Assembly (NCBI GenBank): GCA_002269645.1
Contig: NIVC01002608.1
Span: forward strand, 93,082 to 157,081
Direction: 5' to 3'
DNA: 64,000 nucleotides
From: Macrostomum lignano
Taxonomy: Eukaryota
Below, in pieces: positions 22,489 through 64,000 of this stretch; the first letter of the stretch is position 1; each line of letters starts with the position of its first letter. The notes beneath the pieces were generated by a model that had not been told where the DNA came from, did no database searches, and saw only the letters and a list, made by a program, of their open reading frames with translations. Both the position numbers and the translations under genes were made by a program.

Positions 22489-23589
22489 TCAAGTAGCCGC
22501 TGCCCCCTCCTCCGCCGGCTTTTCCACCGGAACCGCTTCCGCCTCGGCGGCGCCGGAATCATCGCCGCCAAACCTGGCCGCCCGGGCGCGCTTCTTGGCT
22601 GCCACTTCCTCGGAGTCCTCGTTGTCGACGTCCTTATCGGCGGCCGTAAGCCCCTCGGGCTCCTTCATCAGGGCCGGCGAAGTGACAACGCCAAATCGTT
22701 CGGCGCGTTTGCGCATTTTATCAACGTCTCCAGGCGCCAAACTGGCGCCGTCGGATTGGCGCGAGCCGCGCGCCCCGGCTGGTTTTGGCGATGCGTAGTC
22801 GGAGGCGTCGCCGAATCGTTGGGCGCGGGCGCGCTTTCGCGACTCGATCTCCGGGTGAGTGGTGTCGGCGCTTGACGAACTGGCCGGCGCCGCCGGATCG
22901 ACGCCGAATCGTTTGGCGCGCAATTGGCGCCGTTCATCTTCGGTAAGTTCGGCCAGGCCGGCGGCTTTCATTGGGGCGCGCAGGACACCTTCGAGAGGCT
23001 GCGGCGCGGCGGCTTCGGCTTCTTCGGACTTGCTGGCGCCCATTGAGGCTTCGGAGTCGATTTCGATGGCCGCGACATCCACTGATTGGCTGTCTGAAGG
23101 ATCAGTTGGGGTGGTTGTCGCTTTCTCTGTCTCCTTGGTTGGCTCTGATTGGCTGACCGGGTCAGTTGGGGCGGGCTTCGATATTTTCGTCTCCTTGCCC
23201 AGCTCTGATTGGCTGGCAGGGGCGGCTGGGGTTGGCGTCGCAGCATTAGTCACCTTGGCGGCCTCTAATTGGCTACCAGGCACTTTAGGCTCTGGTGGCG
23301 GCGGCGAGGGCGGCACAGAAATTTTGCTGTCCTCATCAAGTTCGCTGCGCTCTTCGCCACTAGTAGCCAGGCTAACTGAGGCGGCGGTGGCCGAATTCTC
23401 GGCCAGAGCATCCTCAGACAGGAGTAGAGACTCTTCGTCAGCCCGAGTAACCAAGTGATTGCGCAGGCGCTGAACCAGTTCCTTCTTGGATCCAGTCACT
23501 GGCAGGCAATATGACTTGCAACGCTCTTTGAGTTCTTTAAGCTTCAGGGAGCTGAGCTGCTCCACTGTGGGCACATCTGCTGACATCAT
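22489..23589 (-). CDS. SARNP: SAP-domain ribonucleoprotein (SARNP/CIP29/Tho1-like mRNA export factor), 366 aa, single coding exon
   Basis: N-terminal SAP domain (LSSLKLKELKERCKSYCLPVTGSKKELVQRL), an acidic Pro/Ala/Ser linker, and four R-x-x-R-F-G motifs (RAKRFG, RAQRFG, RAERFG, RAARFG) typical of Tho1/SARNP C-termini. Confidence 0.85.
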   Translation of the reverse strand: MMSADVPTVEQLSSLKLKELKERCKSYCLPVTGSKKELVQRLRNHLVTRADEESLLLSEDALAENSATAASVSLATSGEERSELDEDSKISVPPSPPPPEPKVPGSQLEAAKVTNAATPTPAAPASQSELGKETKISKPAPTDPVSQSEPTKETEKATTTPTDPSDSQSVDVAAIEIDSEASMGASKSEEAEAAAPQPLEGVLRAPMKAAGLAELTEDERRQLRAKRFGVDPAAPASSSSADTTHPEIESRKRARAQRFGDASDYASPKPAGARGSRQSDGASLAPGDVDKMRKRAERFGVVTSPALMKEPEGLTAADKDVDNEDSEEVAAKKRARAARFGGDDSGAAEAEAVPVEKPAEEGAAAT

Positions 23590-27041: not shown

Positions 27042-27766
27042 TATTTGCATTATAAAGTAGGCCCTAGCATTTACAAAGAAAAGAACAGCGAACAGAACAG
27101 GGAAATTAAATTAATTAATAGGCCTAGTAAATACTAGATAGGCTAGCCATAATAGCCAAATGCCCTGTAGGAATGATAGATAAATACGTTTAAGCAGAAT
27201 CACACTGAAAGAAAGTTGCCCCGTCCCGTGGGTCAACTAACTGAATGACAAATTGAAATTAGGCCTAAGTAACTACAACATCGCACCGCGGGAATAATAT
27301 GTATAGCAAAAAATGCTAAAACGAGGAAGATACTTTTTTAAGGCCCAACCCCGGCCGGGCCAGATTTTTCGATTTAAAATTTCTAAAAGATAAACAAAAA
27401 AGCGACTTAAAATTGGGAGGTATTATTGCATGATAGGCATTAAGGAAGTTCCTAGAGTTCTAAAATAGTATTAAACACATTCAAGCTGTGTTTAGGGCTT
27501 TAAAATTAGCGTCACATATTTTTGAATTTTTGGCATGAATACCGCGGCCAGGCCAAGCCAGGGCAGCCATTTGGCATCCATTGCTTATTCAAGCTCAACC
27601 ACACTAAGCTTCACGAAACTAGTTGCAGCCCATTTTTGTTTTATAATTATTATTAGTACAGACTTGCGTTTTATATTTACTCAGTTTATATTTTGCGTCC
27701 TCCCTTACTTTTTCTAAATATTATACTTACTTCTTCTCCCTGCAGTAAGCAGGTATCGGTATAGCC

Positions 27767-30700
27767 ATGGAGAAGCATCAAAGAAGATTAAATGCTAGAA
27801 CACTTGGTCTAGGATATGCAGAAGCGGCGAAGCTGCTGTCAGAGAATGATGCCAACGATGGAATTGAAAGGTCCAGCATAGCTAAATTTACAGTAGAATT
27901 AGACGCTCTAAATGGCTATAGGTACTACTTCATTCCTGCAAATGAGGAGTTCAAGGACGACTGGAAGTACGATGCATTTCGGTGGAAGTCTCAAGGAACG
28001 GATACAATGCCAAGGTACATAAAGAGAACTGTTTCAAACAGACATACTTGTCTTTATTTTGATTAACGAGCATGTAGCAGTTTTGTGTACAAATGGACAA
28101 TGTTCTGTGGCTCTAAAATTACTTTTGACTTGTTAGATAGACTCACAGTTGGAAGATACTTTTTTCAAGCCCAAACTTTAGGTTGATCATGTTGATTAGA
28201 ATATCTGAAAGACATGGCATTTCACAAAGATTCTTACTTCACTTGGAGACTTTCGTGTACGTAGTGAGATTTTGTAATTTTCTGTTTTATATTATTCATT
28301 TAATTCTATATAATCTTGAAAGCAGGGATCCAGTGGATAGAATTTCAATTACAAATGCTGAATTGAATAAAGTTGTGCACTACTTTTTCTATTGAAAATG
28401 GTGCGTAAAAATTTGATAACATTTTTGCATCATTGCAGCATAATTATTTTTTATGGAAAAATATCACAAATCAAGAATTTTTATGTATGTATACGCACTC
28501 ATTTACCTCCCTTACCACGCATTCGCAGGCAACCTAATCAAAAAGGCCTTGCTCCAGTACTGTACAAGTACAAATACATTGCACTAAATGCATATCAACA
28601 GCATTTATCATTCTGGAGATGTGCATTCTGCCTTTTTCGATCAGATGGCAATGTTGATCAAAGGTGAGATATGTGGAAATGGCTTGAAAAAGAATGAGTA
28701 ATACTTTGCATACAGGAAACACTAAGCTTACTTTGGTTCTCCTCCCATTTCAGTATCACGCTGGTTCACTACTTTGGAGACCCCAACGATTGTCCTGCAG
28801 CCTTGATTCGGGGGCCTCAAAAGCCAGTAGACCAGGACAGTGACGACGAAGATGCCCCGCAAAGCAGCGACAATCAACAATCGAAGGCCAATCGGTTTCG
28901 GACTTGCCCCTCGACAATGAGGGCAATGAAGAAAGAATTGAAGTTAAAAATGCCTGCTGCCGTCTATAATCAATTTATGGCGCAAAACTCGGTAGACGCT
29001 AATCCGTCGTATCTGCCTCGAGATCCCAAGCAGGCGGCCAATGCCAAGTACCGCTCCTCAAAGGCTACTGGACTGGCAGATCAAATGCTGGCTGTCGCTG
29101 CGCTGCAGAATGAGGTGCCAGACTACATCCGGCATTTCACAGGTCTGCCTTACACTGCGATTGTTGTCGGGCAGAGGAATTTGCTGGAGCAAGTGAATAG
29201 AATGCTGCTGTTGAAGCCGAAGAAGCTGCTGATGTCATACGACACTGGCTTCTCTGTGTCAGATGTGCTGGTCTCTGCACTTGTCATACGACTGCCAGTG
29301 TTTGAAGGTGACACTGCCCCTATTGTGGCCCCATTGTACCTGATTCACGACAAGAAAGTCAGTCAGGTTCACCGCATTTTCTGGGAGGCAGCTAGCGAGG
29401 CTCTACCAGCTCTGCGTCAGGTTTCAACTACCTGCGTTTTTGATGGCGAGATTGGGCTGCGGCGGTCTTTACCAGAGTTGCTGCCCAAGGTCAAGATTCT
29501 TGGCTGTTGGAACCACTTGAGGACTGATGTCAAGAGGTGGTTGCAAAAGCACAGGAATCAAAGCACCGAGTTCCGCAAGGATGTCGACAATCTTCTTTGT
29601 TGTGAGACTGAAGACGACTTCCTGGATCTAGAGGCCACGCTGCATGAGAAGGAACACTGGACTGCAAGAGTGGTCAAGTACTATGAAGGCACAATAAGAC
29701 CGGCAATCGTGAAGTACAGCGGCCGCTGGATACTCGGACAGCATTACTGGGACAAGTCAGGCATAACGCAAAACCAGTCGGAAGCTCTGAACGCGCTTCT
29801 TCGAAGACACTTCAACTCGCAGCGTCGTGTTGGCATGATGCAATGCCTCATTGGCCTTCATGCACTCTCGATTGCAAGGCATAACGAGATTGCTCGCAGT
29901 CTAATGGGGTTTGGACGCTACCAGCTGAAGTCCAAGTATGCCTCTCTGAAGAAGGAAATCGGCGAGTGCAATATGCTGCAAGTACCAAAGTACGACACTC
30001 TGATGCAAGCAATCGTATCTGGCGTCACAGGAATGAGCGAAGAATTCGTTGCTCAACTAGTGATGGAACTGTCGGAGAAGAACCAGTCAGCCAGCCAGCC
30101 AGCAAGTCAGCCAGCCAGCCAGCCAGCCGAGGAGCCAGCAAGTCAGCCAGCCGAGCAGCCAGCCAGCCAGCCAGCAAGTCAGCCAGCCAACCAGCCAGCC
30201 GAGCAGCCAGCAAGTCAGCCAGCCAGCCAGCCGGCCGACTCCAGTGACGACGATGAAGATGACAGCAGTGGCGGAGACAGCAGCAGTGAGAGCAGCAGCG
30301 ATGACGAAGGCAAGAATGAGCGTCTGGCCAAGTGCAAAGCTCTAGGCTACAGCTTGGCCGAAGCTGATGACGGCAGTTACATTGTGACTAATACAATAAA
30401 CGCGCGGTTCGTTGTCTACTTCGCTGGCGGCCAGGCCTTATGCTCGTGTCCGATGCAGACTAAGTGCACCCATATTGGATTCGTCGGGTGCATGAAGAAT
30501 ATTCCGGTTGTATCGGACGGTCTGCCAAATGTAACGCGCATTTTGCAGAGGCCTAAAGGAAGAAAGACGCGACCTGGAAAGCCTTACACCAGAGAGGAGA
30601 CTAAAGACCTCAAGAAAATGAAACGGACTAAGATAAAGTCGAAGCTGCCGTCAAGACGAGACGCGAAGCCTGCCGATGGGCCCCCATCACCACCAGCAGT

Positions 30701-32513
30701 GCGCGTGACAGGAATTCCCATTCCTACCGTACCTGGAGGAGTGCGCCTGACAGGTGTTCCCGGAGGAGTGCGCCTGACAGGTGTACCCGGAGGAGTGCGC
30801 CCGACAGGTGTACCCGGAGGAGTGCGCCTGACAGGTGTACCTGGAGGAATTCGCCTGACAAACATACGTGCGTCATCTGCTCCAGTACCCGGACTGCGCT
30901 GCACACAATTTCGCGTTTTTCGCCAGCCGGCTAGGCCGCCTCCTCCTGCTTATCCAGGGCATACTACGCCAATGGAGAGCCGGCCACCCGACCAGTCAGC
31001 CAGCCAGCCAGCCAGCCGACCAGCCAGCCAGCCAACCAAGCAACCTGCCGAACAGCCGACCAGCCAGTCAGCTGGCCAGCCGACCAGTCAGCCAGCCAGC
31101 CAGCCAGCCGACCAGTCAGCCAGCCAGCCAGCCAGCCGACCAGCCAGCCAGCCAACCAACCAACCTGCCGAACAGCCGACCAGACAGTCAGCTGGCCAGC
31201 CGACCAGCCAGTCAGCAAGCAAGCCAGCCAGCCGACCAGCCAGCCAGCCAACCAATCAACCTGCCGAACAGCCGACCAGCCAGTCAGCTAGCCAGCAAGC
31301 CGACCAGTCAGCCAGCCAGCCGACCAGCCAGCCAGCTAGCCAGCCGAGCCGTAAGCGAGTCAGCCAAAGTTACGAGGAGACGTTTTTGACTGACCTAACC
31401 AACCTACCAGCTAAACGGCGTCAAAGTTCTGCATCGGTGGATACGGAGCGAAAGCTGTTCACCGTCAGAACTGACAGATCGGACTACGCTATCTGGACCT
31501 ATGAGCGTGACAGCTTGCATGGCACACGCTGGATTTCAGCAAGTGTACGTGTCGAAACTGAATCACTCGTTGATGATTAAAATTAAAATCTCATCATGCA
31601 TTCCCCTCGTTCACTGCTGCAGATCCCCAACGCCTACATAGCTGTACTGGCATGTCAGGCTAAGTGTGGCATTACGCCTCTGTACAATTACGAGGTGGAC
31701 ACACTAGGGGACGCCATCCTGCAAGACGAACTTCAGACGAAGCTTGTGAATGCTAATAGGAAGGCAGGCTCCCGCATTCTTGTCGGCCCTCTGCTACTTA
31801 GCCATCACTTTTGCCTGCTCATCATAGACTTACGACTGCGCAGTCTCGTTGTCATTGACCCGAAGGTCAGGCAGAGCGACGAGCTGACTAAGAAATTCGT
31901 TATCGCTGTCAAGTAAGCTAAAGTTCTGTTGAAACAGTAAACTTGCTCCATTTCGACATGAAGGTCCAAAAGTTTGCGAAACACCCACATTGCTACTTAC
32001 CCCTAAACACCCACCTAATCTGCACGCAGCCAACTGCAACATCTTACTGGCTGGCCGACCCTGGACAAGCCTGCACGCATGCCAGGGCACTTCGTTCAGG
32101 AGGACAGCTACAGCTGTGGCATCCTGGTGTGCCTCTTTGCGGAGAGCGTCATTTATACGAAGCACACCGTCCTGCCAGAAGTCGTTCACAACCTCCCTTA
32201 CCAGAGACTGCGCATCTGGAATACCTTGGTGAAGGCCGCCATCGGCTCGAGTGGCCTGTGCTTCACCTGTGGCGAGGAGGAAGTTTTTTCGACTCGGCGG
32301 CACAGGAAGCCGGATGAATGGGTAAGAAACATTTGCACACAGCAGCAGTACACGTGTCAAAATTACCTTCCCCATGCCCCTTTATCTTCATCACAGATTG
32401 CCTGTGATTCCTGTGAAGCCTGGCATCACCAGTTCTGCGTTGGAATCGCAAAGCTAGCACCGTCAAGGGTGTGGCACTGCCCCACTTGCCGGCTCGGAAG
32501 GCAGACAGACTGA
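27767..32513 (+). CDS. MULE transposase fused to SWIM zinc finger, Ulp1/C48 SUMO-peptidase-like domain and PHD finger, ~1,290 aa; exons 27767-28014, 28529-28663, 28754-31544, 31623-31912, 32030-32321, 32397-32513
   Basis: All five introns are GT-AG and phase-compatible (3,873 nt, no internal stop). N-terminal DDWKYDAFRWKSQG...LVHYFGD (WRKY/GCM-like). DDE core MSYDTGF / VFDGE / GCWNH / NQSEALN. SWIM CSCPMQTKCTH. Ulp1 motifs RWISAS|IPNAY, HFCLLIID, VIDP, QEDSYSCG. PHD CFTC...W|IACDSCEAWHHQFC...WHCPTC. Confidence 0.9.
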
Positions 32514-33398
32514 TTGACGAATGGTAATTATCATGATCTGACTAGTCTGTTTCGAGTATCAGCTTGCAGCATTTACTTGCAGCAATTTATAAGTACAACA
32601 CTTCTCTATAAAATCCACTGAAGTCGTTCCATTTTTGTCTTTATTCAACCGATAATTTTACGCAAGCATTAGATACAAAAATAAGTATGTCGAAAAAAAG
32701 TCATCACGATTAATTATGTTACAAAGTGTCTTGAATTTCATTAATTCAAGAATAAATTCATTTTGTTGGAGACCACTCAGTTGCGACATTGTCGTTTTTC
32801 ACCGTTTATTACTGACATGCCCAGTCCTCTTATGTTTTATCCACAGAACTTACACAAAATGCTCAATCAGCGTTCTCTTTTTAGAATAGAACTGAGTAGA
32901 AATAGATACGCGCTCACACTACTTTGTTGATGAAGAGGAATGAGTAGCCATATGTTAGTCTATGGCCAAAACATCGGGGTTTTCGCGAGTGTCTATGAGG
33001 CGAAGGCTTAAAGTTAGTTCTGTGTAAGTTCTGTGGTTTTATTTGCTGTTTAACGTAATGTTATCTTCATCAACTGATTGCAATCTTTTGTCGTCAATGA
33101 CTATATTTTCTTAACTTGTAATAACAAATACATCGATAACGAAGGCTGAATAATTGAAAACTACGTTCGCATATAACACGAGAGATTAAGAAAAAGAACA
33201 TAAATTACACGTACGAATTTTACTGGCTTAATTGAGTTTAAAGGCAATAAAAACAGGGACTCAGCATACCAATAGCATATAAAAATGATAGCGCCCTATT
33301 GTTGTCAAAATCAATTACTGACACTGCGAATGTTGCACATTACTGAAAACAATTATTGCTAGCTTCATTACAACAGTTATGTGCTTGCGACCTGCCTT

Positions 33399-34604
33399 TC
33401 ACTTTGATGCCGATCTGCCGGTGGCCTTCGACTTCGATCCTGATCCGCCGGTGGCCTTCGACTTCGATCCTGATCCGCCGGTGGCCTTCGACTTCGATCC
33501 TGATCCGCCGGTGGCCTTCGACTTCGATCCTGATCTGCCGGTGGCCTTCGACTTCGATCCCGATCCAGTGTTAGCCATTGATTTGCTGACGACGATGCTG
33601 CTTTTCTGCCATTTAGTTTTGCATGCTCTGTTTCTTATTTTCGTAGACGGAAGACGAGCAGCTTCCGAAGCTTCTCTTACGGCAGCTTCCGAAGCTTCTC
33701 TTACGGCAGCTTCCGAAGCTTCTCTTACGGCAGCTTCCGAAGCTTCTCTTACGGCAGCTTCCGAAGCTTCTCTTACGGCAGCTTCCGAAGCTTCTCTTAC
33801 GGCAGCTTCCGAAGCTTCTCTGACGGCAGCTTCCGAAGCTTCTCTTACGGCAGCTTCCGAAGCTTCTCTTACGGCAGCTTCCGAAGCTTCTCTTACGGCA
33901 GCTTCCGAAGCCTCTCTTACCGCAGCTTCCGAAGTCTCGCTTACGGCAGCTTTCGAAGCCTCTTGAATGTCATCATGATCTTGAAACTCTAGAGAAGCGG
34001 TTTCGTCACCTGCAGACTCAACATTTTCATTGATCTCGCAGTCGTACGTGCTTTTGCGGAACTCAATTTCGGAAGCATTACCAGAATTTATACTAAATTT
34101 CGTTGCTTTAACGCACTCTGCTTGAATCTGCTTAGTGCAGGCGATTGAAGCTCGAATGAGGCCTGCCAATGCAGGAGAAGCAAACGACTCTGCTCGCCTT
34201 AAATTCTTTAACGCCTTGATGATTAGTCCGTTAGCCATACCATCATCGTTACGCTCAATTACATCTACGCGCTTCCAATGGTGACCTTCAAGCCAGTCTC
34301 TGCCAGCCTCAACAGCACGAAGACGGTTCGAATAATCTTGTCTCGCGTCGGACGATGTCTTTTTTCGAAAAACAGCTACGCCATCTACTAACGCCAAAGA
34401 AAGGCCTCCACAACTTAGATATTTGATGTCACTCCCAGGAACTGTTCGCAGATTGGATTCTAAAACATTAACACTCAGATAATGAGCTGCTTCGCGTACG
34501 TTGCTAACGTTGACATTTAAACCAACAACTAGATCGACATCAGGGCAATCGCGCGGCAAGGGCCCCTGAGCTTCGAAAATGACGAACGGATCTTTGACGA
34601 ACGC
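33399..34604 (-). CDS. MULE accessory ORF of unknown function (>=400-aa exon, convergent with the transposase), with EASEAAVR x~12 and GSGSKSKATG x~5 repeats; start codon not located
   Basis: Open frame from the acceptor atttatttcag|GCG at 34605/34604 to TGA at 33399. About 230 aa of non-repetitive sequence precede the repeats. Lies inside the TIRs. Confidence 0.6.
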   Translation of the reverse strand, partial: AFVKDPFVIFEAQGPLPRDCPDVDLVVGLNVNVSNVREAAHYLSVNVLESNLRTVPGSDIKYLSCGGLSLALVDGVAVFRKKTSSDARQDYSNRLRAVEAGRDWLEGHHWKRVDVIERNDDGMANGLIIKALKNLRRAESFASPALAGLIRASIACTKQIQAECVKATKFSINSGNASEIEFRKSTYDCEINENVESAGDETASLEFQDHDDIQEASKAAVSETSEAAVREASEAAVREASEAAVREASEAAVREASEAAVREASEAAVREASEAAVREASEAAVREASEAAVREASEAAVREASEAAVREASEAARLPSTKIRNRACKTKWQKSSIVVSKSMANTGSGSKSKATGRSGSKSKATGGSGSKSKATGGSGSKSKATGGSGSKSKATGRSASK

Positions 34605-34670
34605 CTGAAATAAATTTTAGAGCAAATTTTACTGCACGATACTCACTCAGTACAAAAAAACATTGATACT

Positions 34671-35590
34671 ATTGATACTGGTAAACAAGGCATACTTAAG
34701 GTGTTTAGGGCTAGTTTTATTCTAATCAAGCATCTAAGGTAAGAATGGACCTGCACATTATAGTAAACATATGGAAACATGAAAGCATGAAAATATTGTG
34801 TTTTCATGTTTAGTACTATATATAGATAGTTTAAAGTAAAGAAGGTATTGATACTGGTAAACAAGGCATACTTAAGGTGTCTAGGGCTAGTTTTATTCTA
34901 ATCAAGCATCTAAGGTAAGAATGGACCTGCACATTATAGTATACATATGGAAACATGAAAGCATGAAAATATTGTGTTTTCATGTTTAGTACTATATATA
35001 GATAGTTTAAAGTAAAGAAGGTATTGATACTGGTAAACAAGGCATACTTAAGGTGTCTAGGGCTAGTTTTATTCTAATCAAGCAGCTAAGGTAAGAATGG
35101 ACCTGCACATTATAGTAAACATATGGAAACATGAAAGCATGAAAATATTATGTTTTTATGTTTAGTGCTATATATATAGATAGTTTAAAGTAAAGAAGGT
35201 ATTGATACTGGTAAACAAGGCATACTTAAGGTGTCTAGGGCTAGTTTTATTCTAATCAAGCATCTAAGGTAAGAATGGACCTGCACATTATAGTAAACAT
35301 ATGGAAACATGAAAGCATGAAAATATTGTGTTTTCATGTTTAGTACTATATATAGATAGTTTAAAGTAAAGAAGGTATTGATACTGGTAAACAAGGCATA
35401 CTTAAGGTGTCTAGGGCTAGTTTTATTCTAATCAAGCAGCTAAGGTAAGAATGGACCTGCACATTATAGTAAACATATGGAAACATGAAAGCATGAAAAT
35501 ATTGTGTTTTCATGTTTAGTGCTATATATATAGATAGTTTAAAGTAAAGAAGGTATTGATACTGGTAAACAAGGCATACTTAAGGTGTAT
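34671..35590. repeat. 176-178-bp tandem repeat, five full copies plus a partial copy, inside the MULE
   Basis: Units start at 34671, 34847, 35023, 35201, 35377 and 35555 (ATTGATACTGGTAAACAAGGCATACTTAAGG...), nearly identical and AT-rich. Confidence 0.95.
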
Positions 35591-37531
35591 AATATTTAAT
35601 GATAGGCCTAAGCGTAGAAAAGGTAGACTTTTGGAAATATAGGAAAAGGGTAAAGTAAGTTTCATAAAATGGTATGCATGGCTTTCATTATATTTCATTA
35701 TGTATATTATTATCTAATAACCTATTGAAATAGGTGTGATATGCCATTCAAGTCTAGAAAGAAAGCAATAATGAAAGAATAGTTTTATAAAAAGGTAATC
35801 AATTCATATTTATTTAGATTTTAGTACTAGGTTTGCTAAAAAGAACATTAAATAATTAAATAATTTTATTCAAATTGTTATTAGTGGCAATGTTTTGAGC
35901 TTTGAGATTTGACAAATAAATTTATATAGCTTAGCTATAAAGTACAGGAGAGTAATATCCCTCTTAGCCTAAGAGAGTAAATAAAGGCCTATACAAAGCA
36001 TAACTTTTTTATAAATGTTAAAGTCTAAAGCTTAATATGTAACATGTTGGATGGATATATAATATAGTTGAAAGAAAAAATGATATTTGTGTAATGCCAA
36101 AGCTCATGTAAGACTTTGCTTTATACTTAATGTAATAGTAACAGACATAGATACCTACCGACAAACCATTTTTAGTTTTGGGGGGGGTTGAATGTAAAAC
36201 TTAAAATATGTAAAACCTATATAAAGTAAAGGCAGATGCATTTTTCTTAGAACCGGTAATAACTAGTAACTAACTATTACTTTTTAATAAACATAATTAG
36301 TACGACAAATAATTATGCTTATAAGACATTCAGATAGGTATGCTCCAGTCCTATCGGACAACTTACATGCTATTTTTTTGTTTATCTTTGAGAAATTTTA
36401 AATCGAAAAATCTGGCCCGGCCGGGGTTGGGCCTTAAAAAAGTCACACCCCTAAAACGAAAACTTGAATTTTAATTCTAAAATACCAACATATTTAAACC
36501 CAACAGAAATTTATATAAAGTATGTTTTAAAAAAGTTTCGTGCAATTGAGTGCGGTTTCATACCTGTAAAATGCTTATACTAGTAACTAGGTAATGTATT
36601 TTTTTAACTAAGTAAAAAGTTCTCAGAAAAGGTTTTAAATTTTGTATGTATGGCTTTTATTTTCCATGTCGTCGCCGCAGCAAATAATTACTGTATAATG
36701 AACGACGACAATGTTCAAGTTATTTTTTCGAATGCGTAATAGGTCTAGCGTCTAAATTTTAAAACATTGTTAGTGAAATAGACAGAGAATATACAGTAGG
36801 CCTAATGTATTTACAAGATAATATGGACAAGGTTACTACATAAATCATAAATGCACAATCGAAATTAATTTTAATACATATGCTGTGGATTTATTATATC
36901 TAGCCATTACAGATCATAATGTAAAACTTAGATATTTTATTAAATATGTAATGTATAGGCCTATTTATGGTCACTGGTCAGATCGTCATATTCCATTTCA
37001 TCATATCGGATGACGAAGTGACCAGAAGCAAAGTAGCTTGAAAAATAATAATTTAATATGACGAAGTGACCAAATATTTAGTTTATGCTGGATACTTCGT
37101 CATCAACCAATCAATCTATGCGTGATTCGAGCTAGTGTAGGCTATTTTTTGTTTAATAACTAAAAGCTACAGCAAGCAGAACTGATCAATTGACAGGTTT
37201 TATCAATCGAGATGACAAAATGACTGGGATCATTAGGATTCCAACAAGTAAATATATTTTATTGCCACAATAATTCACTAGAAGTTGGAACTAATTGGAT
37301 GATGAAATGACTCTCTTCAGAAGTTCAGGTAGTGCATATTAATTAAGATGACAAAGTGACCATAGTCGAGGGCGAGGTGAGCACCCCAGACATCCAGATG
37401 ATGAATTGACTAGGAACCCTATTTATTACATAGGGGCCTAATTCTGATTATTCTGTACTTATTAATTATACAATAACTTTGATTAAAATAGATGACTGAT
37501 CTAATCAGACAAGATGAATAGTTGATTTAAA

Positions 37532-40704: not shown

Positions 40705-43700
40705 CACGGTTGGGCTGGAATAAGATTTCGGGGTAAAAAAATGCCCAATAAAATGACCACTGCAGTGTGATAGAGGAACATCTCAGCTGCTAGGGGAATA
40801 TTTTCCTAAAATGAAATCGGTTTGTCCTGACCAGTTATGCCTAATTATGTTAATTAGCTAGCATAATTAATTTATGTACTCGAAATTAGGCGCTTCCTTC
40901 GTGTGAAATCGCCTAAAAACTGCTTTTATGGCCTGGTCTGCTTTAATGTTTTTATGATATAAACTGCTATTATACTGGATGAGCAGTTGCTAATCAGAAT
41001 GTATGCAGCAGCCAATGCTCTGCTCTAGCTTCAATATGAACTGTTGTGCTCTAGGTCTCACGCACTCTCTCTGCTCAATATTGAAATCAGCACATGAACG
41101 TACGTTCGTACTGTTCTATTTCATATGCGTCGGACTGTCAGATGTACATTAATTATTGCAACTTTCATAGCCAACTCATATCAGCACTCAAATAAATATC
41201 ACAACCAATACTCAAGTCAAGGCCAAATTCAAAACATTTGTCTCTTGCATCAGTGGCCAGCGATCAATTTCAGAATTTCAGAATATGCCGAATGCAAAAA
41301 AATCACATGAGGAGTGCAGAGAGAGTCTGTGTTTGCTCTGTTTGCGGAAAGCCTCGCGCTCAATTTGGTCGGTAGCAAATTTTTCTGCTGAGGATTTGGT
41401 GCCGAATTTCGCCTCTGTACAGCACATTCTGCCGACCGGCTTGTGTGACGGGTGTCGACGCATCATTTCATCTCTATCTGGTCCAGCGCCTCGTGAGTTG
41501 CCACCAAGGCTAAACTATGAGCAGATGGTTGCCGACCTGCAGAGTCTGCCTCCGTCCACAAGAAATAATCCGCATTGCTCTTGCGAACTGTGCGAGCTTG
41601 CCAGATCGAAGAACAGCAGCAAGTTGACAACTTCTGTCAGCTCTTACAGTACTGGCGCTGCTGCATCTCGTCCAGGACGACCTCGAAAACATCCATTGTC
41701 GGCAGCTGATGCAGCACAACCACAGTTCATTTGCTCGTTTTGTCGATCAGAAATTGGCCGTGGCAAGAAACACAACTGCTCAAGAGCAACGCGACTGACT
41801 AATCTGCAGCAGGGCGTCAGTCCTGATATGCAGGACATGCTGGCCAGCAGCTGCATATCAACAAAAGCTGCAGCAAGTGGCTCCAGCTGTGTTTCCTTGT
41901 CACGGATGGAAGGTGGTCGCCCAATGCGCGTGACTGTTGGTGCTAGTGTGGGCAATGGAGCAACCAGCTTCCCTGCAACTTCTATCAGCACAATGAAGAC
42001 ACTGAAAGGTGTGCTGAATCTTAGCAACAATCAGACGCTGCAGGTCGCGCAGGTACTGAGAGCTGGTGCGAGCTCTTTGCGAGCAGTTGAATCTAGGCTG
42101 AAAGATTCATTAGTGACTCAGAATCGTGTATTGGAAGACTTTTTTAAACTTCAGACACTTCAATTCGAGCTGTCATCTTCTGCCATTGGTGATCGTGCTG
42201 CTGTCCTCTGCACTGATGCTTCGCGCCTCATTGAATTTATTGTCCAACAGCGAGGAGCCTCTAACTTCGAATGCCGGCTGGGGCTTGATGGTGGCGGAGG
42301 TTTTTTTAAGATTTGCATGTCTGTCGTTGCGTCCACGTCTGACCATCAGGCGCACGGCGGTGCTGCTGCAGTTCACGAAAGTGTGCGACGCCACTCACAG
42401 TTCAATGACGCTGGAGTGAAAAAAATTATAGTTCTCGCAATCGTCAACGACATCTCAGAAACGTACAAAAATGTAAAAACACTGCTACAGGCTGTTTCTG
42501 TGGTGGAGCTGTCTGCTGTGACTGTCACAGACATGAAGCTAGCAAACATTCTCTGCGGACTCCAGCCTCACTCGTGTGCTCACCCATGTCCGTACTGCGA
42601 GTCTACTGCACCACTGACGACAAGCGGCAGGCCACGAACCCTTGGTAGAATTCGGCAGAAAGTGCAGGAGTTCAATTCTGCTGGACGAGTTTGGAGCAGA
42701 GCGAAGCAGTTCATGAACTGTGTCAATCTGCCGCTGCTGGCTGGTGATGATGACGAGGAAGTGCTGATGCTGCTGCCCCCTCCTGAACTGCATCTTCTGC
42801 TCGGAATCAGTAACAAATTGCTTGATTCTTTGAACGAAGCTTGGGGCGAAGACCGCGGATTTGCATGGCTACAATCTTACGGCATCGTGCGAGCGGGGTA
42901 CCGCGGCGGCACAATGGAAGGCAACGCTTGTCGCAAATTGCTGCTGATGGCTGAGGACCTGAGGTTCTTCTTGAAGACGTTCCTCATGAACTACAGCCCT
43001 TCGTCCAGTGCTTGATTTGCTTCAACAGCGTTGTTAATGGAGCATTTGGCCAGGAATTGGCCCCGGATTTTGGTGAGCGAATCGAAAATTTTGGAGCTGC
43101 ATACCTGGCACTGGGATTGACTGTCACGCCCAAAGTGCATGTTCTCCTTTGCCACGTGAGCGACTTCTGCCATCGCACTGGTCGTGCACTTGGAACTTGT
43201 TGCGAACAGGCAGTAGAGAGCGCACACTTGGATTTCCAGCGGACTTGGCAGCGCTACAGGCTGCCAGCCGATCACCCACAGTTCGGCAATAGGCTGCTGC
43301 AGGCAACAGTGGTGTATAACAGCTGGCATATCTAATGCAGTGACATATTTAATGCGGTGATGGCTTTTCATTTGACTAAATTTACTGTCGTGTTGTGCAG
43401 CCTACTTTGCTGCATGCTGTTGTTACCAGCACTACTACATGGATGAAGAAAAACAGTATAATAGGAGCAATATTTCCATGACTATTTGTGAAGGGATCTA
43501 TCTAAAAGTTCAACATCCAAAAGTTTGAATATTGATTCTATTGGCAATGGAAGTAATTCAAAAGAAATATTCAATATCTAAAAAAACTTTTGACCCAGAC
43601 TTTTCTGCTCAGATTAGCAATATTCTCTTCTACATCTGTGACATGTATCTCGTAGTACCTGCATGCTAAAACATAAACTGATCATGAATTGCTATAGAAG

Positions 43701-46966: not shown

Positions 46967-49900
46967 ATGGATGAAATTGACCCTGATGCATGTCGTTACT
47001 GCCTGCGACGCTTGCGTTCGCCCTACATCGCCTGCTCTGACTGCCGCTTGCCGTCTCACCCGGCTCTGCAGCAGCAGCAGCAGCAGCAGAAGCGCAGGAT
47101 TGTTCGCCTATGCGTTCGCTGCTTCGCCAGCGGAGCCGAGGCTGGCAAGCACTCGCGTCGTCATGACTACCGATTAGAGACAGTGCGCGACTGGGAGAAG
47201 CAAGCGATTTTCCATCCGGCCACTGACGCCGCCGCCGCTCATTGGTCCTTCGATGAGGAGACCCGCCTGCTGGATTCTATCGACGTTTATGGCGTCGGCA
47301 ATTGGAGCGACGTTGCGTCGAAAGTTGATGGTAGAACTAGCGATCAGTGCATTGAGCACTACTCTAAGTATTATATGCGCGGTGTTATCGGGGCCAAGAC
47401 TTTTTTGCCTGTTGCTGCCTCCGCAGCCACTACAGTTGCTGAGGAAAAGCCGCTGGAGATACCGCTGGGTCAAGTTGAAGACTTGACAGCTGCGCCTGGG
47501 GCGCCTCTGTCACCGTCACTGTTTCAGGTACTTTTGCTTGAGACCCTAATTAATTAGTTACTGCTGCACTGATCCCATTTCAACCCGTACCCCACTAATT
47601 TGCCCCACACTTATCAATTAATCCCATACCCTATAAATCCCATATTCACTGAGTGATCCATCCCATACACCTATCAATCAAACATTGATCATCCCATACC
47701 ATCATAAATTCCACACTGCTGTTCATCCCATAATTGATAAATCCCACACTGAGCATCCCATACCCCATAAATCCCACACTGATCATCCCAAACCCCATAA
47801 ATCCCACACTGATTATCCCATACTCCATAAATACCACACTGATCATCCCATACCCCATAAATACCACACCGATCACCCCATACCCCATAAATACCACACC
47901 GATCATCCCATACCCCATAAATACCACACTGATCATCCCATACCCCATAAATACCACACCGATCATCCCATACCCCATAAATACCACACTGAGCATCCCA
48001 TACCCCATAAATACCACACTGATCATCCCGTACCCCATAAATACCACACCGATCATCCCGTACCCCATAAATACCACACCGATCATCCCATACCCCATAA
48101 ATACCACACCGATCATCCCATACCTCATAAATCCCACACTGATCAATGTGATCATCCCATACCCCATAAATCCCACACTGAGCATCCCATACTCCATAAA
48201 TACCACACTGAGCATCCCATACCCCATAAATCCCACACTGAGCATCCCATACTCCATAAATCCCACACTGATAATCCCATACCCCATAAATCCCACACTG
48301 ATAATCCCATACCCCATAAATCCCACACTGATAATCCCATACCCCATAAATACCACACTGATCATCCCATACCTCATAAATCCCACACTGACCAATGTGA
48401 TCATCCCATACCCCATAAATCCCACACTGAGCATCCCATACTCCATAAATCCCACACTGAGCATCCCATACTCCATAAATCCCACACTGAGCATCCCATA
48501 ACCCATCTCACAGGCCCTGCCGCCGGCCGACCTGACTCAGGAGGAGGCCCAGCTGCTCGGCTTTATGCCTCTGCGAGGCGATTTCGAACGCGACTATGAC
48601 AATGAAGCTGAAAGCCTGCTGTGCCAGCTGCAGCCCAGCTTCGAGCAGGACGAGCTCGACAACGCGCTGCGCGTAGCCCAAATCGACATGTACACCGGCC
48701 GGCTGCAGGAGCGACAGCGTCGGAAACTGATTGCTGCTAGGCACGGCCTGCTGCACCAGGCTATGCGCTGCATCCTGGCCAGGGGGGTCGGCGGCCGCCC
48801 GCCCGCCTCAGCCCCGTCTGTTGGCCCCAGCCCGGGGCCTCGGAGGCGGCACGCCGTCAACTACAATGCGTTAGACGTTGACGATCGATTGAAGCCATTC
48901 CTGCGGTATCTCGGGTCAGCCGAGGCCAGGCAGTTCTTGGCCGGCGTGGAACGGGAGGAACGGCTTAAATGGGAGATTAGTCAGCTGTTGAGACTGCGGA
49001 CTGCCGGGGCGAAACGCCTGCCGGGTGAGTTACCGCGTCAGTTGGCGCCATTGGCTTCCCTGTCAGTTGGCGCCATTGGCTTCCCTGTCAGTTGGCGCCA
49101 TTGGCTTCCCTGTCAGTTGGCGCCATTGGCTTCCCTGTCAGTTGGCGCCATTGGCTTCCCTGTCAGTTGGCGCCATTGGCTTCCTTGTCAGTTGGCGCCA
49201 TTTGCTTCCTTGTCAGTTGGCGCCATTCTCTCCCGTGTCAATTGGCGCCATTGGCTTCCCAGTCAGTTGGCGTCATTGGCTTCCTTGTCAGTTGGCGCCT
49301 TTCTCTAGTGTCAGTTGCCGCCCTTCTCTTCCGTATCATGTGGCGCCATTCTCTCTCTTGTCAGCCGGCGCCATTCTCTCTCTTGTCAGCTGGCGCCATT
49401 CTTTCCTGTACCAGTTGGCGCCATTCTTTCCCGTATCAATTGGCGCCATTTTGTCTCGTGTCAGTTGGCGCCATTGGCTTCCCAGTGGTTTTCGTTATTT
49501 TTTTATTAGCGCTGCTTTCTGAAATTCCGGTTTTTGAGCAGCATAAAAAATCCAATTACAATTTTCATCTAATAAGCGTGTTTTATTACTTACAACAACC
49601 CCCATTCAGTAGCATTATAAGTTAATCGATTTTTTCCGCAGTCGATTTCTTCCCGCCGGCCAGCGCACTCGCTGCCACTAATGGCGGTGGCGGCCGTGGC
49701 CGAGGCCGGCCCCCGCCTCCGCTACGCTGTCCTCGAGCTCGTCTCGGCTGCCGTATTCTCAGCAGCATGAGCGGCATCAATTAGTTCGGTGCCATCGCTG
49801 GTTCCTGCCAGTGTCAGTCTGCTCAGTATGGCAGCAGCATCATCTGCATCGGCGAAGGGACGGCGGCAGCTCGCAGGATGGCGTTGATGGTCATCAGCAT

Positions 49901-63600: not shown

Positions 63601-64000
63601 AAGCGAGCACAGAAGCCAGCACAGAAGAGAGGACAACAGCCGGTCCCGAGGCTACTACTGAGACTGCACCGCCGCCGACGGAGAGCAGCAGTACTACTGG
63701 CACCACCGACGAGGCAGTGACGCCGTCGGAGGAGTCGACTTTGACAACAGAGCCGTCGACTGCGGACTCTTCGTCGGCTACTATTAGCTCCTCGGCTTCA
63801 CCGGAAGCGAGCACAGAAGCCAGCACAGAAGAGAGGACAACAGCCGGTCCCGAGGCTACTACTGAGACTGCACCGCCGCCGACGGAGAGCAGCAGTACTA
63901 CTGGCACCACCGACGAGGCAGTGACGCCGTCGGAGGAGTCGACTTTGACAACAGAGCCGTCGACTGCGGACTCTTCGTCGGCTACTATTAGCTCCTCGGC
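54642..64000 (+). CDS. Giant mucin-like Ser/Thr/Glu/Ala/Pro repeat protein (68-aa unit APPPTESSSTTGTTDEAVTPSEESTLTTEPSTADSSSATISSSASPEASTEASTEERTTAGPEATTET), >3,100 aa, partial
   Basis: One + frame has no stop through the whole array, while the other two + frames stop in every unit. About half the residues are Ser/Thr. Absent from the ORF track because it lacks a stop within the window. Upstream in-frame TAA at 54639; N-terminal junction unresolved. Confidence 0.6.
54689..64000. repeat. 204-bp tandem array, ~45.6 copies, almost perfectly homogeneous, runs off the right edge
   Basis: Period is 204 nt. The only variant noticed is A>G at 55981. Confidence 0.98.

What the first reader, a model, noticed from the sequence alone, without database searches (positions are those of the whole stretch)
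27316..36459. Intact Mutator-like transposon whose transposase is fused to a SUMO-protease-like (Ulp1) domain and a PHD finger: candidate self-encoded anti-silencing machine
Seen: exact 9-bp TSD, 77-bp TIRs, and six phase-compatible exons giving one ~1,290-aa protein ordered WRKY/GCM-like DNA-binding region, MULE DDE core, SWIM, long disordered linker, Ulp1/C48 with His (HFCLL), Asp (VIDP), Gln and Cys (QEDSYSCG) all present, then a C4HC3 PHD. The PHD only becomes canonical after removing a 75-nt intron. Established: Ulp1-like domains occur in some plant MULEs and some animal MuDR-type elements; SUMOylation is needed for piRNA-guided transcriptional silencing in animals; PHD fingers read histone H3 tails. 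Inference: a transposase carrying its own deSUMOylase and chromatin reader in cis could counter SUMO-dependent silencing or steer integration. The intact ORF and retained CpGs suggest a young, possibly active copy.
Basis: partly seen in the sequence, partly recalled or inferred. Interest (0 to 1): 0.82.

Follow-up and report, generated by a model that had tools for sequence, protein, structure and literature searches.

The report
Intact flatworm Mutator transposon with protease-PHD tail
This is a real, recently mobile Mutator-like transposon of the flatworm Macrostomum lignano whose transposase carries a SUMO-protease-like domain and a PHD finger, but the same layout recurs in many animal relatives and was noted in the literature by 2010, so it is a well-preserved new member of a known kind rather than a new machine.

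Summary
There is an exact 9-bp TSD (CTAAAACGA), 77-bp TIRs (72/77 identical) and six GT-AG, phase-compatible exons giving 1,290 aa.

A second full copy on another M. lignano contig begins and ends at exactly the same bases. It has its own 9-bp TSD and differs by 0.8%, so the element moved recently.

On its own, the window protein passes only Pfam PHD. C48 falls just short (19.5 vs 20.7 bits), and MULE and SWIM give no hit. A profile search found 976 relatives. The long ones carry CG-1-like N-terminus + MULE DDE + SWIM + Peptidase_C48 + PHD. Models built without the window protein align to it across all five splice junctions.

His1120, Asp1137, Gln1178 and Cys1184 are present and near-invariant in the family. 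The modelled core is RNase H-like and best matches the IS256 transposase ISCth4.

A spider-mite relative is also an intact element with TIRs and a 9-bp TSD.

The element is not Rehavkus by sequence, despite its PHD finger and subterminal minisatellite.

Ulp1 domains in animal Mutator transposases (hydra, lancelet), and Ulp1+PHD on a transposase, were published in 2010. The anti-silencing idea is untested here, and the CpG argument is weak.

Verdict: new member of a known kind; moderate-low interest.

The parts
27316..27324 (.). Left target-site duplication, CTAAAACGA
   Evidence: Identical 9-mer at 36451-36459 directly outside both termini. Homology to the second copy stops exactly inside it.
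27325..27401 (+). Left terminal inverted repeat, 77 bp, tip GGAAGATAC
   Evidence: 72/77 identical to the reverse complement of the right TIR. 70 nt are 99% complementary. The tip is identical in copy L005.
27767..28014 (+). Exon 1: start codon and first part of the CG-1-like DNA-binding domain
   Evidence: First ATG after an in-frame stop; donor AAG|GTACAT. The N-terminus aligns with the N-termini of relatives.
28151..28174 (+). Internal direct copy of the left terminus (22/24 nt), inside intron 1
   Evidence: Repeat family D10; sequence shown. Its role is unknown: it could be a subterminal binding site or the remnant of a rearrangement.
28529..28663 (+). Exon 2: middle of the CG-1-like domain
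   Evidence: Acceptor ttcgcag|G, donor AAAG|GTGAGA, phase compatible. The leave-window-out N-terminal HMM aligns aa 53-137 across both junctions, 41.3 bits.
28754..31544 (+). Exon 3: end of the CG-1-like domain (to 28781), DDE core, linker 1, SWIM, linker 2 and start of C48. Core = aa 183-570, 28917-30080, with D291 at 29241, D358 at 29442, C379-x2-H382 at 29505-29516 and E471 at 29781. SWIM C691-x-C693-x5-C699-x-H701 lies at 30441-30473.
   Evidence: The core profile finds 976 relatives. D/D/E and CxxH are near-invariant. The AlphaFold model has pLDDT 80 and an RNase H-like fold. The top fold match is the ISCth4 IS256 transposase. The SWIM leave-out HMM scores 22.5 bits, and the family profile hits MEKK1 SWIM at E 4.7e-5.
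30083..30238 (+). Coding microsatellite in linker 1: (CCAG)n-derived, encodes SQPA-type repeats
   Evidence: Tandem repeat. In copy L005 this array is 92 nt longer, which breaks the reading frame.
30729..30860 (+). 27-bp coding repeat x4.9, encoding VPGGVRLTG units
   Evidence: It lies between SWIM and C48.
30978..31351 (+). Coding microsatellite in linker 2 (CCAG-type, SQPA/SQPT repeats)
   Evidence: It is 124 nt shorter in L005. It is also the break-point of the truncated third copy, L006.
31623..31912 (+). Exon 4: C48 N-terminal half with His1120 (31806) and Asp1137 (31857)
   Evidence: The exon 3/4 junction rebuilds the conserved W-[LI]-x4-I motif (RWISAS|IPNAYI). Pfam Peptidase_C48 gives 19.5 bits and SENP1 E 8e-4.
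32030..32321 (+). Exon 5: C48 C-terminal half with Gln1178 (32097) and Cys1184 (32115), plus the first half of the PHD (from Cys1232, 32259)
   Evidence: The family profile hits SENP1 at E 8.7e-29 and Ulp1 at 7.6e-23.
32397..32513 (+). Exon 6: second half of the PHD finger, and the stop codon
   Evidence: Pfam PHD is full length only in the spliced form, 29.2 bits against a cut-off of 24. C4HC3 spacing confirmed.
33394..33963 (.). 30-bp (x5.8) and 24-bp (x12.8) tandem arrays in the 3' non-transposase half
   Evidence: The 24-bp array is 216 nt shorter in L005.
33399..34616 (-). Convergent open frame on the minus strand, annotated in GenBank as BOX15_Mlig003807g2 (PAA56541.1; partial, no start codon); orphan, no Pfam domain
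   Evidence: The GenBank annotation of this assembly is built from RNA-seq transcripts (PMC5730564). The frame is also present in copies L005 and L006.
34670..35588 (.). 176-bp subterminal minisatellite, 5.2 copies
   Evidence: It is expanded by 2,391 nt in copy L005.
36374..36450 (-). Right terminal inverted repeat, 77 bp, tip GGGTGTGAC on the minus strand
   Evidence: Identical tip in L005.
36451..36459 (.). Right target-site duplication, CTAAAACGA

Best explanation
The feature is a 9,126-bp autonomous cut-and-paste DNA transposon of the Mutator (MULE) superfamily. It sits in Macrostomum lignano contig NIVC01002608.1.

Its single spliced gene encodes a 1,290-aa transposase from a widespread animal MULE clade. 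The ancestral layout of that clade is: CG-1-like (WRKY-related) DNA-binding domain, DDE/RNase H core with the MULE C-x2-H motif, SWIM zinc finger, low-complexity linker, Ulp1/SENP-type C48 cysteine protease, PHD finger.

Shown:
- The structure, the gene model, the family membership and the completeness of the catalytic residues.
- Recent mobility: two full copies at different sites, each with its own 9-bp TSD, 0.8% apart.
- The window copy is the one with an unbroken frame.

Inferred mechanism:
- The N-terminal domain and SWIM bind the TIR or subterminal DNA, and the DDE core excises and integrates with a 9-bp stagger.
- The PHD finger most resembles H3K4me3-reading PHDs. It tethers the enzyme to histone H3 tails in open chromatin.
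- The C48 domain removes SUMO, or a related ubiquitin-like modifier, from proteins at the donor or target site. Candidates are the transposase itself, repair factors or silencing factors. The effect would favour transposition.

Which substrate is cleaved, and whether the effect is anti-silencing, is not known.
For: Boundaries: TSD and TIR. A second copy (L005) has homology that starts and ends exactly at 27325 and 36450, with its own TSD GGTTCTGGT.

Organism: exact ORF look-up to GCA_002269645.1, and papers tie that accession to M. lignano.

Gene model: canonical splice sites and phases. HMMs built without the window protein align across all five junctions: C48+PHD 47.4 bits over aa 1048-1284, N-terminus 41.3 bits over aa 53-137.

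MULE:
- 976 relatives at E<=1e-3; 25 of 35 long relatives hit Pfam MULE and 5 hit Transposase_mut.
- D291, D358, E471 and C379/H382 are near-invariant.
- The model has pLDDT 80 with D291 on beta1, D358 after beta4 and E471 after an all-alpha insert.
- The best fold matches are ISCth4 (IS256 family) chains, probability 1.0.

C48: the family profile hits SENP1 at 8.7e-29 and Ulp1 at 7.6e-23. His is kept in 29/29, Asp in 26/29, Gln in 29/29 and Cys in 29/29 sequences.

PHD: Pfam 29.2 bits. The nearest solved PHDs are mostly H3K4me3 readers: PHF2, TAF3, PHF8, PHF13, PHF23, DIDO1, BPTF, Spp1.

Shared architecture: of 35 long relatives, 27 have the C-terminal module, 34 have SWIM and 24 have the N-terminal domain. 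The T. urticae relative is itself an element with 41-nt TIRs and the exact 9-bp TSD TCAAATGTT.
Against: - The window protein alone does not reach the Pfam thresholds for MULE, SWIM or C48.
- Phe1121 replaces the Trp that follows the catalytic His in 25/29 relatives. In SENP1 that Trp helps clamp the Gly-Gly tail (my own knowledge), so activity or specificity may differ.
- No transcript evidence for the five junctions could be obtained. No transposase protein of this element is in the annotated proteome; GenBank submission excluded transcripts overlapping repeats.
- The second full copy has a broken frame caused by length changes in the coding microsatellites. The family may therefore be decaying, or the assembly may be wrong there.
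- No biochemical data exist for any transposon-encoded Ulp1 domain in the papers I read.
Confidence: 0.82

Rival explanations
1. Anti-silencing machine. The cis-linked deSUMOylase removes SUMO from piRNA- or heterochromatin-linked silencing factors at the element's own chromatin, and the PHD brings it there. The element thereby escapes SUMO-dependent transcriptional silencing.
For: The catalytic set is conserved across the clade, which argues that catalysis is under selection. In Arabidopsis, VANDAL MULEs whose anti-silencing gene VANC carries a captured Ulp1 domain (KIU) cause hypomethylation of related copies, although the role of the Ulp1 part is unknown (PMC13317346). The dependence of animal silencing on SUMO is established knowledge, not tested here.
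Against: There is no evidence here about substrates, localisation or silencing. The PHD most resembles readers of H3K4me3, a mark of active rather than silenced chromatin. Ulp1 and OTU domains also sit on unrelated transposases (Ginger1, Crypton, Helitron), where authors proposed repair- or ubiquitin-pathway roles.
Confidence: 0.2
2. Self-processing protease. Like other clan CE proteases that cut after Gly-Gly, the C48 domain cleaves the transposase's own linker. It would separate the DDE-SWIM part from the protease-PHD part, or it would mature the protein.
For: The linker between SWIM and C48 holds five tandem VPGGVRLTG units, each with a Gly-Gly. The long linkers are disordered in the model (pLDDT <50). 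Gly-Gly specificity of clan CE viral proteases is from my own knowledge.
Against: The Gly-Gly repeat is a recent 27-bp tandem expansion. The closest relative, P0001, has PGARLPGVP/CGVRL there without Gly-Gly. Linkers of other relatives are not alignable. Nothing was tested.
Confidence: 0.08
3. The protease and PHD exons are not part of the transposase. Introns 3-5 are not spliced as modelled, the transposase ends at the stop at 31578-31580, and the C48/PHD frames are separate or dead.
For: There is no RNA evidence for the junctions. Without splicing, the long frame ends at 31580.
Against: All sites are canonical and in phase. The exon 3/4 junction rebuilds the conserved W-[LI]-x4-I motif and the exon 5/6 junction rebuilds a canonical C4HC3 PHD. 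Relatives encode the same order in one uninterrupted frame.
Confidence: 0.06
4. [quoted passage not shown]
For: All three descriptive traits are present: 9-bp TSD, C-terminal PHD, and a 176-bp minisatellite 786 bp inside the right TIR with variable copy number between copies.
Against: A profile of six Rehavkus DDE domains (supplement of PMC6446971) scores at most 20 bits on any relative and does not hit the window protein. The family profile scores at most 9.5 bits on Rehavkus. The motifs differ: D[AS]TGS and [CD]-x-AH-x2-K in Rehavkus, against SYDT[TG]F and CWNH here. Relatives hit Pfam MULE directly.
Confidence: 0.04
5. It is a domesticated host gene or an assembly duplicate rather than a mobile element.
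For: [quoted passage not shown]
Against: The two full copies have unrelated flanks and different 9-bp TSDs, and homology ends exactly at the TIR tips. TIRs and TSD are present. A truncated third copy also exists.
Confidence: 0.01

Closest known systems
MuDR-type transposons with a Ulp1 domain from Hydra magnipapillata and Branchiostoma floridae (Repbase Reports 2008/2009, cited and aligned in Bao, Kapitonov and Jurka 2010, PMC2836005)
   Same: An animal Mutator-superfamily transposase carrying a C-terminal Ulp1/C48 domain. [quoted passage not shown]
   Different: The text does not say which Mutator entries carry the PHD. No flatworm member is mentioned.
Tetranychus urticae element encoding XP_015792073.1 (LOC107368716)
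   Same: Same clade (core E 2e-25). It has Pfam MULE and Peptidase_C48, and the family C48+PHD model covers it end to end. It has 41-nt TIRs starting GG and an exact 9-bp TSD.
   Different: It is 3,963 bp with a single uninterrupted ORF. It has no minisatellite, no second open frame and no microsatellite linkers. The window element is 9,126 bp with five introns.
Rehavkus (Repbase; Dupeyron et al. 2019, PMC6446971)
   Same: 9-bp TSD, PHD finger in the transposase, and a tandem-repeat array before the 3' TIR with variable copy number.
   Different: The DDE domains are not significantly similar and the catalytic motifs differ. No Ulp1 domain is mentioned for Rehavkus in the papers read.
Plant Ulp1-carrying MULEs: Kaonashi/KIU in Arabidopsis VANDAL elements, CUMULE of melon, and rice and grapevine MULEs
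   Same: Mutator-superfamily elements that carry a Ulp1-like C48 domain. KIU-carrying VANDALs have anti-silencing activity.
   Different: In plants the Ulp1 domain is a captured host fragment in a separate gene (VANC-type), often in non-TIR elements. It is not fused behind DDE-SWIM and has no PHD. The role of the Ulp1 part is unknown there too.
Ginger1-9_HM (Hydra)
   Same: A DNA transposase with a C-terminal Ulp1 domain followed by a PHD finger.
   Different: The catalytic domain is a Gypsy-integrase-type DDE and the TSD is 4 bp. It belongs to a different superfamily.
ISCth4 / IS256-family bacterial transposase (PDB 6xg8, 6xgx)
   Same: Best structural match of the modelled catalytic core: RNase H fold with an all-alpha insertion. 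Pfam Transposase_mut hits in 5 relatives.
   Different: It is prokaryotic, without the CG-1-like, SWIM, C48 or PHD modules. Identity is 12-17% and TM-score 0.25-0.39.

Membership tests
Mutator/MULE superfamily | Target-site duplication of 9-11 bp | tested here: met
   Exact 9-bp TSDs in the window copy and in copy L005, and in the T. urticae relative.
Mutator/MULE superfamily | Long terminal inverted repeats | tested here: met
   77-bp TIRs, 72/77 identical.
Mutator/MULE superfamily | DDE triad with a C/D-x2-H motif after the second Asp, on an RNase H fold with an alpha-helical insertion | tested here: met
   D291, D358, C379-x2-H382 and E471 are near-invariant in 51 sequences. The model places them on beta1, after beta4 and on the helix after the insert. 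The top fold match is an IS256 transposase.
Mutator/MULE superfamily | Match to the curated profiles Pfam MULE (PF10551) or Transposase_mut (PF00872) | tested here: inconclusive
   The window protein has no hit at E<=10. Of 35 long relatives, 25 hit MULE and 5 hit Transposase_mut. The link to them is E 1e-51 to 1e-25.
Peptidase C48 (Ulp1/SENP) | Catalytic His-Asp-Cys plus oxyanion Gln in the conserved order and motifs | tested here: met
   H1120, D1137, Q1178 and C1184 align with the invariant columns. The family profile hits SENP1 at 8.7e-29 and Ulp1 at 7.6e-23.
Peptidase C48 (Ulp1/SENP) | Pfam PF02902 gathering score on the protein itself | tested here: not met
   19.5 bits against a cut-off of 20.7, E 9.4e-4, covering profile positions 86-185. 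A leave-window-out family HMM gives 47.4 bits.
Peptidase C48 (Ulp1/SENP) | Cleavage of SUMO or another ubiquitin-like modifier | not testable with these tools
   Needs a biochemical assay. Phe1121 in place of the usual Trp is a caution.
PHD finger | C4HC3 spacing and the Pfam PF00628 gathering score | tested here: met
   29.2 bits against 24, full profile length, in the spliced form only. Spacing confirmed.
PHD finger | Binding to a histone H3 tail | not testable with these tools
   The nearest solved PHDs are mainly H3K4me3 readers. That is similarity only.
SWIM zinc finger | C-x-C-xn-C-x-H signature and a profile match | tested here: met
   C691-x-C693-x5-C699-x-H701. The leave-out family HMM gives 22.5 bits. 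The family profile hits the MEKK1 SWIM structure at E 4.7e-5. Pfam SWIM does not hit the window protein itself.
CG-1 / WRKY-GCM1-type DNA-binding domain | Profile match of the N-terminal domain | tested here: inconclusive
   The window N-terminus has no direct Pfam hit. Of 28 aligned relatives, 23 hit CG-1 (best 1.4e-13) and one hits WRKY. The leave-out HMM scores 41.3 bits on the window. WRKY structures appear only at E 0.1-0.8.
Rehavkus | 9-bp TSD, PHD finger, minisatellite before the 3' TIR | tested here: met
   definition.
Rehavkus | Transposase DDE domain related to Rehavkus transposases | tested here: not met
   The profile of six Rehavkus DDE domains scores at most 20 bits on relatives and does not hit the window. 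The reverse search gives at most 9.5 bits.
Active (currently mobile) element | Intact transposase frame, intact ends, and more than one recent insertion | tested here: met
   The window copy is intact. A second copy is 0.8% divergent at another site with its own TSD.
Active (currently mobile) element | Observed excision or insertion polymorphism, or an empty site | not testable with these tools
   No searchable eukaryotic genome or read collection was on hand.

The most novel reading that the evidence does not exclude
The PHD-Ulp1 tail conserved in this animal MULE clade is a chromatin-directed deSUMOylase. It lets the transposase either strip SUMO-dependent silencing marks from its own copies or license integration at H3K4me3-marked promoters. 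M. lignano has an intact copy and working transgenesis, so it would be the first animal system in which a transposon-encoded SUMO protease could be tested in vivo.
Probability: 0.15. Interest if true: 0.75.

Novelty: new member of a known kind. Interest (0 to 1): 0.3.

Why it matters
Why transposons of several unrelated superfamilies (MULE, Ginger1, Crypton, Helitron with OTU) carry ubiquitin-like-modifier proteases has been an open question since at least 2006-2010. In the papers I read, no such domain has been tested biochemically.

This locus adds no new architecture. It does offer a structurally intact, recently mobile copy in an animal where transgenesis by microinjection works (PMC5730564), so the question could be addressed by experiment there. 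An autonomous endogenous cut-and-paste element could also be useful as a genetic tool in this flatworm.

A side result may interest people who study transcription-factor origins. The N-terminal DNA-binding domain of the clade is a homologue of the CG-1 domain of CAMTA transcription factors, and I found no open paper making that link.

Tried and rejected
1. Pfam on the unspliced ORFs and on the spliced protein gave no MULE or SWIM hit. This was resolved through the exhaustive profile search.
I did not try to get round this, so the geometry of the catalytic residues is unmodelled.
Look-ups of the unspliced ORF pieces and of the SAP-domain ORF found nothing.
4. The word-indexed homologue search found only one relative, P0001. 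Repeating it with the 51-sequence alignment again returned only P0001, probably swamped by low-complexity words; that search was wasted.
5. Cluster look-ups gave an organism name for only one relative, T. urticae, so the taxonomic spread of the clade remains largely unknown.
6. Rfam found nothing in the window.
7. Rehavkus membership was considered because of the PHD, the minisatellite and the 9-bp TSD. It was rejected on sequence.
8. The CpG-retention argument was rejected as uninformative, because the flanks are tandem repeats.
9. Substitutions between the two copies (6 synonymous, 8 non-synonymous, mostly in the linkers) are too few to say anything about selection.
10. A literature search for the annotated locus name found nothing.

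Full report
**1. What is in the sequence**

The reported boundaries are exact. The 9-mer CTAAAACGA lies at 27316-27324 and again at 36451-36459, directly outside two inverted termini. The termini (27325-27401 and 36374-36450) are 72/77 identical, with 70 nt at 99% complementarity. The five mismatches fall at positions 3, 4, 6, 7 and 61. The element is 9,126 bp long.

**2. Source organism and other copies**

A 576-aa ORF elsewhere in the window is on record, letter for letter, on NIVC01002608.1 of assembly GCA_002269645.1. That assembly is Macrostomum lignano Mlig_3_7.

Searching the minus-strand open frame inside the element returned three annotated M. lignano proteins on three contigs. One of these contigs, NIVC01002284.1 (locus L005), holds a second full-length copy of 11,288 bp:
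- Its homology to the window starts exactly at 27325 and ends exactly at 36450.
- The flanks are unrelated to those in the window.
- It has its own perfect 9-bp duplication, GGTTCTGGT.
- It has the same unequal tips, GGAAGATAC... and ...GTCACACCC.

The two copies differ by 70 substitutions in about 8.9 kb (0.8%) plus length changes in tandem repeats. A third copy, L006, is a decayed fragment truncated at its 5' side inside a coding microsatellite.

The element is therefore a true mobile element that moved recently. The copies are not an artefact of the assembly's known redundancy, because their insertion sites differ.

**3. Gene model**

| Exon | Coordinates |
|---|---|
| 1 | 27767-28014 |
| 2 | 28529-28663 |
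| 3 | 28754-31544 |
| 4 | 31623-31912 |
| 5 | 32030-32321 |
| 6 | 32397-32513 |

Together they give an uninterrupted 3,873-nt frame of 1,290 aa. The five introns are 514, 90, 78, 117 and 75 nt, all GT..AG and all phase-compatible.

I could not obtain RNA evidence. Three independent observations support the junctions:
- The exon 3/4 junction rebuilds the conserved Ulp1 motif W-[LI]-x4-I (RWISAS|IPNAYI).
- The exon 5/6 junction turns a partial PHD match (profile positions 10-47, 24.7 bits) into a full one (1-47, 29.2 bits, cut-off 24).
- Hidden Markov models built from relatives without the window protein align to it continuously across all five junctions. The N-terminal domain aligns over aa 53-137 at 41.3 bits, and C48+PHD over aa 1048-1284 at 47.4 bits.

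Most relatives encode the same order of domains in a single frame.

**4. Domains**

On its own the window protein is divergent. Pfam gives only PHD above threshold. Peptidase_C48 falls just below it (19.5 vs 20.7 bits, E 9e-4). MULE and SWIM give nothing. A sequence search of solved structures finds SENP1 at E 8e-4.

An exhaustive profile search with the core (aa 183-570 plus the one close relative, P0001) found 976 proteins at E<=1e-3 and 57 at E<=1e-30. The 35 relatives of at least 750 aa were checked in two ways.

By Pfam:

| Pfam family | Relatives hit (of 35) |
|---|---|
| MULE | 25 |
| Peptidase_C48 | 19 |
| PHD | 8 |
| CG-1 | 6 |
| Transposase_mut | 5 |

By family models:

| Module | Relatives with it (of 35) |
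|---|---|
| SWIM | 34 |
| C48+PHD tail | 27 |
| N-terminal domain | 24 |
| All three | 17 |

*Catalytic core.* The family alignment shows D291, D358, E471 and C379-x2-H382 as near-invariant. An AlphaFold model of aa 183-770 (pLDDT 80, pTM 0.70) has the RNase H order of strands and helices. D291 sits on beta1, D358 follows beta4, and E471 lies on the helix after an all-alpha insertion. Its best structural matches are the four chains of the IS256-family transposase ISCth4 (probability 1.0), followed by Hermes. IS256 is the bacterial counterpart of Mutator, so this agrees with the MULE assignment.

*Protease and PHD.* The family C-terminal profile hits SENP1 at 8.7e-29, SENP2, yeast Ulp1 at 7.6e-23, and PHD fingers at about 1e-8. 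The catalytic His, Gln and Cys are invariant and the Asp nearly so (26/29). The window protein has all four: H1120, D1137, Q1178, C1184. One deviation stands out: Phe1121 follows the catalytic His where 25 of 29 relatives have Trp.

*SWIM.* The full-length family profile also hits the MEKK1 SWIM structure (E 4.7e-5). The window has C691-x-C693-x5-C699-x-H701.

*N-terminal domain.* This is best described as CG-1-like. Of 28 aligned relatives, 23 hit Pfam CG-1 (best 1.4e-13) and one hits WRKY. WRKY structures appear only weakly, at E 0.1-0.8.

**5. The rest of the element**

After the stop codon at 32513 come about 3.9 kb without transposase coding sequence:
- a 30-bp array and a 24-bp array;
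- a convergent minus-strand open frame (33399-34616), annotated in GenBank from transcript data as BOX15_Mlig003807g2. It is partial, without a start codon, has no Pfam domain, and has relatives only in M. lignano;
- a 176-bp minisatellite of 5.2 units.

The arrays vary between copies. In L005 the 176-bp array is 2,391 nt longer and the 24-bp array is 216 nt shorter.

The two linkers of the transposase are themselves coded by CCAG-type microsatellites. In L005 these differ by +92 and -124 nt, which breaks the frame. The window copy is thus the intact one of the two. The coding microsatellites look like a built-in weak point, or else a place where the assembly is unreliable.

**6. Comparison with known elements**

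Rehavkus is defined by a 9-bp TSD, a PHD finger and a minisatellite before the 3' TIR, and all three are present here. However, six Rehavkus DDE domains taken from the supplement of PMC6446971 show no significant similarity in either direction. Their catalytic motifs also differ. The element is a MULE proper, and the resemblance to Rehavkus is descriptive only.

The fusion itself is not new. Bao, Kapitonov and Jurka (2010) state that Ulp1 domains are encoded in Mutator transposons of hydra and lancelet as well as plants. [quoted passage not shown] C48 domains also occur in Cryptons.

A RefSeq protein of the spider mite Tetranychus urticae belongs to the same clade. I found that it sits in a 3,963-bp element with 41-nt TIRs and the exact 9-bp TSD TCAAATGTT.

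I found no paper describing this family in M. lignano.

**7. How it probably works**

Shown: the anatomy, the family, the conserved catalytic residues and the recent transposition.

Inferred: ordinary MULE cut-and-paste by the DDE core, with the CG-1-like and SWIM modules recognising the ends. The PHD finger most resembles H3K4me3-reading fingers (PHF2, TAF3, PHF8, PHF13, PHF23, DIDO1, BPTF, Spp1). It most likely tethers the enzyme to H3 tails in open chromatin. That would fit the known preference of Mutator elements for gene 5' ends, which is established knowledge and was not tested here.

The C48 domain has kept its catalytic residues across a deep clade, so it is most likely an active isopeptidase for SUMO or a related modifier, acting at the site of transposition. 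Whether its target is the transposase, repair factors or silencing factors is unknown.

An H3K4me3-type PHD would point to active rather than silenced chromatin. A self-processing role is a further possibility, because there are five VPGG repeats in the linker. Those repeats are a recent expansion absent from the closest relative.

**8. Verdict**

- The element is a new member of a known kind.
- Its main value is practical. It is an intact, recently mobile copy in a flatworm where transgenesis works, which makes the old question of what transposon-borne Ulp1 domains do testable.

Noticed in passing
window 27902-28781 (spliced aa 46-137); alignment A6: The N-terminal DNA-binding domain of this MULE clade is homologous to the CG-1 domain of CAMTA transcription factors. 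Of 28 relatives, 23 hit Pfam CG-1 (best E 1.4e-13), sharing the E-x3-IL, P-x2-P-x-GG, D-x3-W, F-x-R and VLIHY motifs. Similarity to WRKY is only weak. A full-text search found no open paper linking CG-1 to transposases.
   Followed up: partly
window 28151-28174: A third, direct copy of the left terminus (GGAAGATACTTTTTTCAAGCCCAA, 22/24) lies 826 bp inside the element, within intron 1. It matches the left tip, not the right one. Its role is unexplained.
   Followed up: no
window 33399-34616, minus strand: A convergent open frame inside the element is annotated from transcripts as BOX15_Mlig003807g2 (PAA56541.1; partial, no start codon). It has about 200 unique residues followed by EAAVREAS and GSGSKSKAT repeats, no Pfam domain, and relatives only in other copies of the element. 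The layout recalls the convergent mudrA/mudrB pair of maize MuDR, but its function is unknown.
   Followed up: partly
window 30083-30238 and 30978-31351; L005: The transposase linkers are coded by CCAG-type microsatellites that stay open in all three forward frames. In the second full copy their lengths differ by +92 and -124 nt, which breaks the frame. The third copy is truncated inside one of them. This is either a fast route to inactivation or an assembly error.
   Followed up: partly
L003 7798-11778 (Tetranychus urticae HE587328.1): The spider-mite relative XP_015792073.1, annotated only as an uncharacterised protein, lies in a 3,963-bp element with 41-nt TIRs and the exact 9-bp TSD TCAAATGTT. 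It is an apparently intact element of the same clade.
   Followed up: yes
L004 5574-7205 (ENA ERZ1700621 contig): Directly upstream of another clade member (P0089: Transposase_mut + C48) lie two short called genes with ubiquitin C-terminal hydrolase (UCH, PF00443) hits. This may be a second, different deubiquitinase associated with a transposon.
   Followed up: no
window 54688-64000: A 204-bp unit is repeated 45.7 times at 99% identity (GC 61%) and runs off the window end. It is open as a 3,090-aa frame on the minus strand, and it could be either a very homogeneous coding repeat or a satellite. More generally, the window is packed with 19-30-bp minisatellites (27 arrays scoring above 300).
   Followed up: no
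window 41285-43015: A 576-aa single-exon ORF that starts with Cys-rich CxxC motifs has no Pfam match. It is on record as a called gene on the same contig.
   Followed up: no
window 819-1514(-), 22489-23589(-), 46967-49308(+): The host genes around the insertion are a two-pore-type ion channel fragment, a SARNP-like SAP/Tho1 protein and the transcriptional adapter ADA2. The element lies in repeat-rich intergenic DNA between them.
   Followed up: partly
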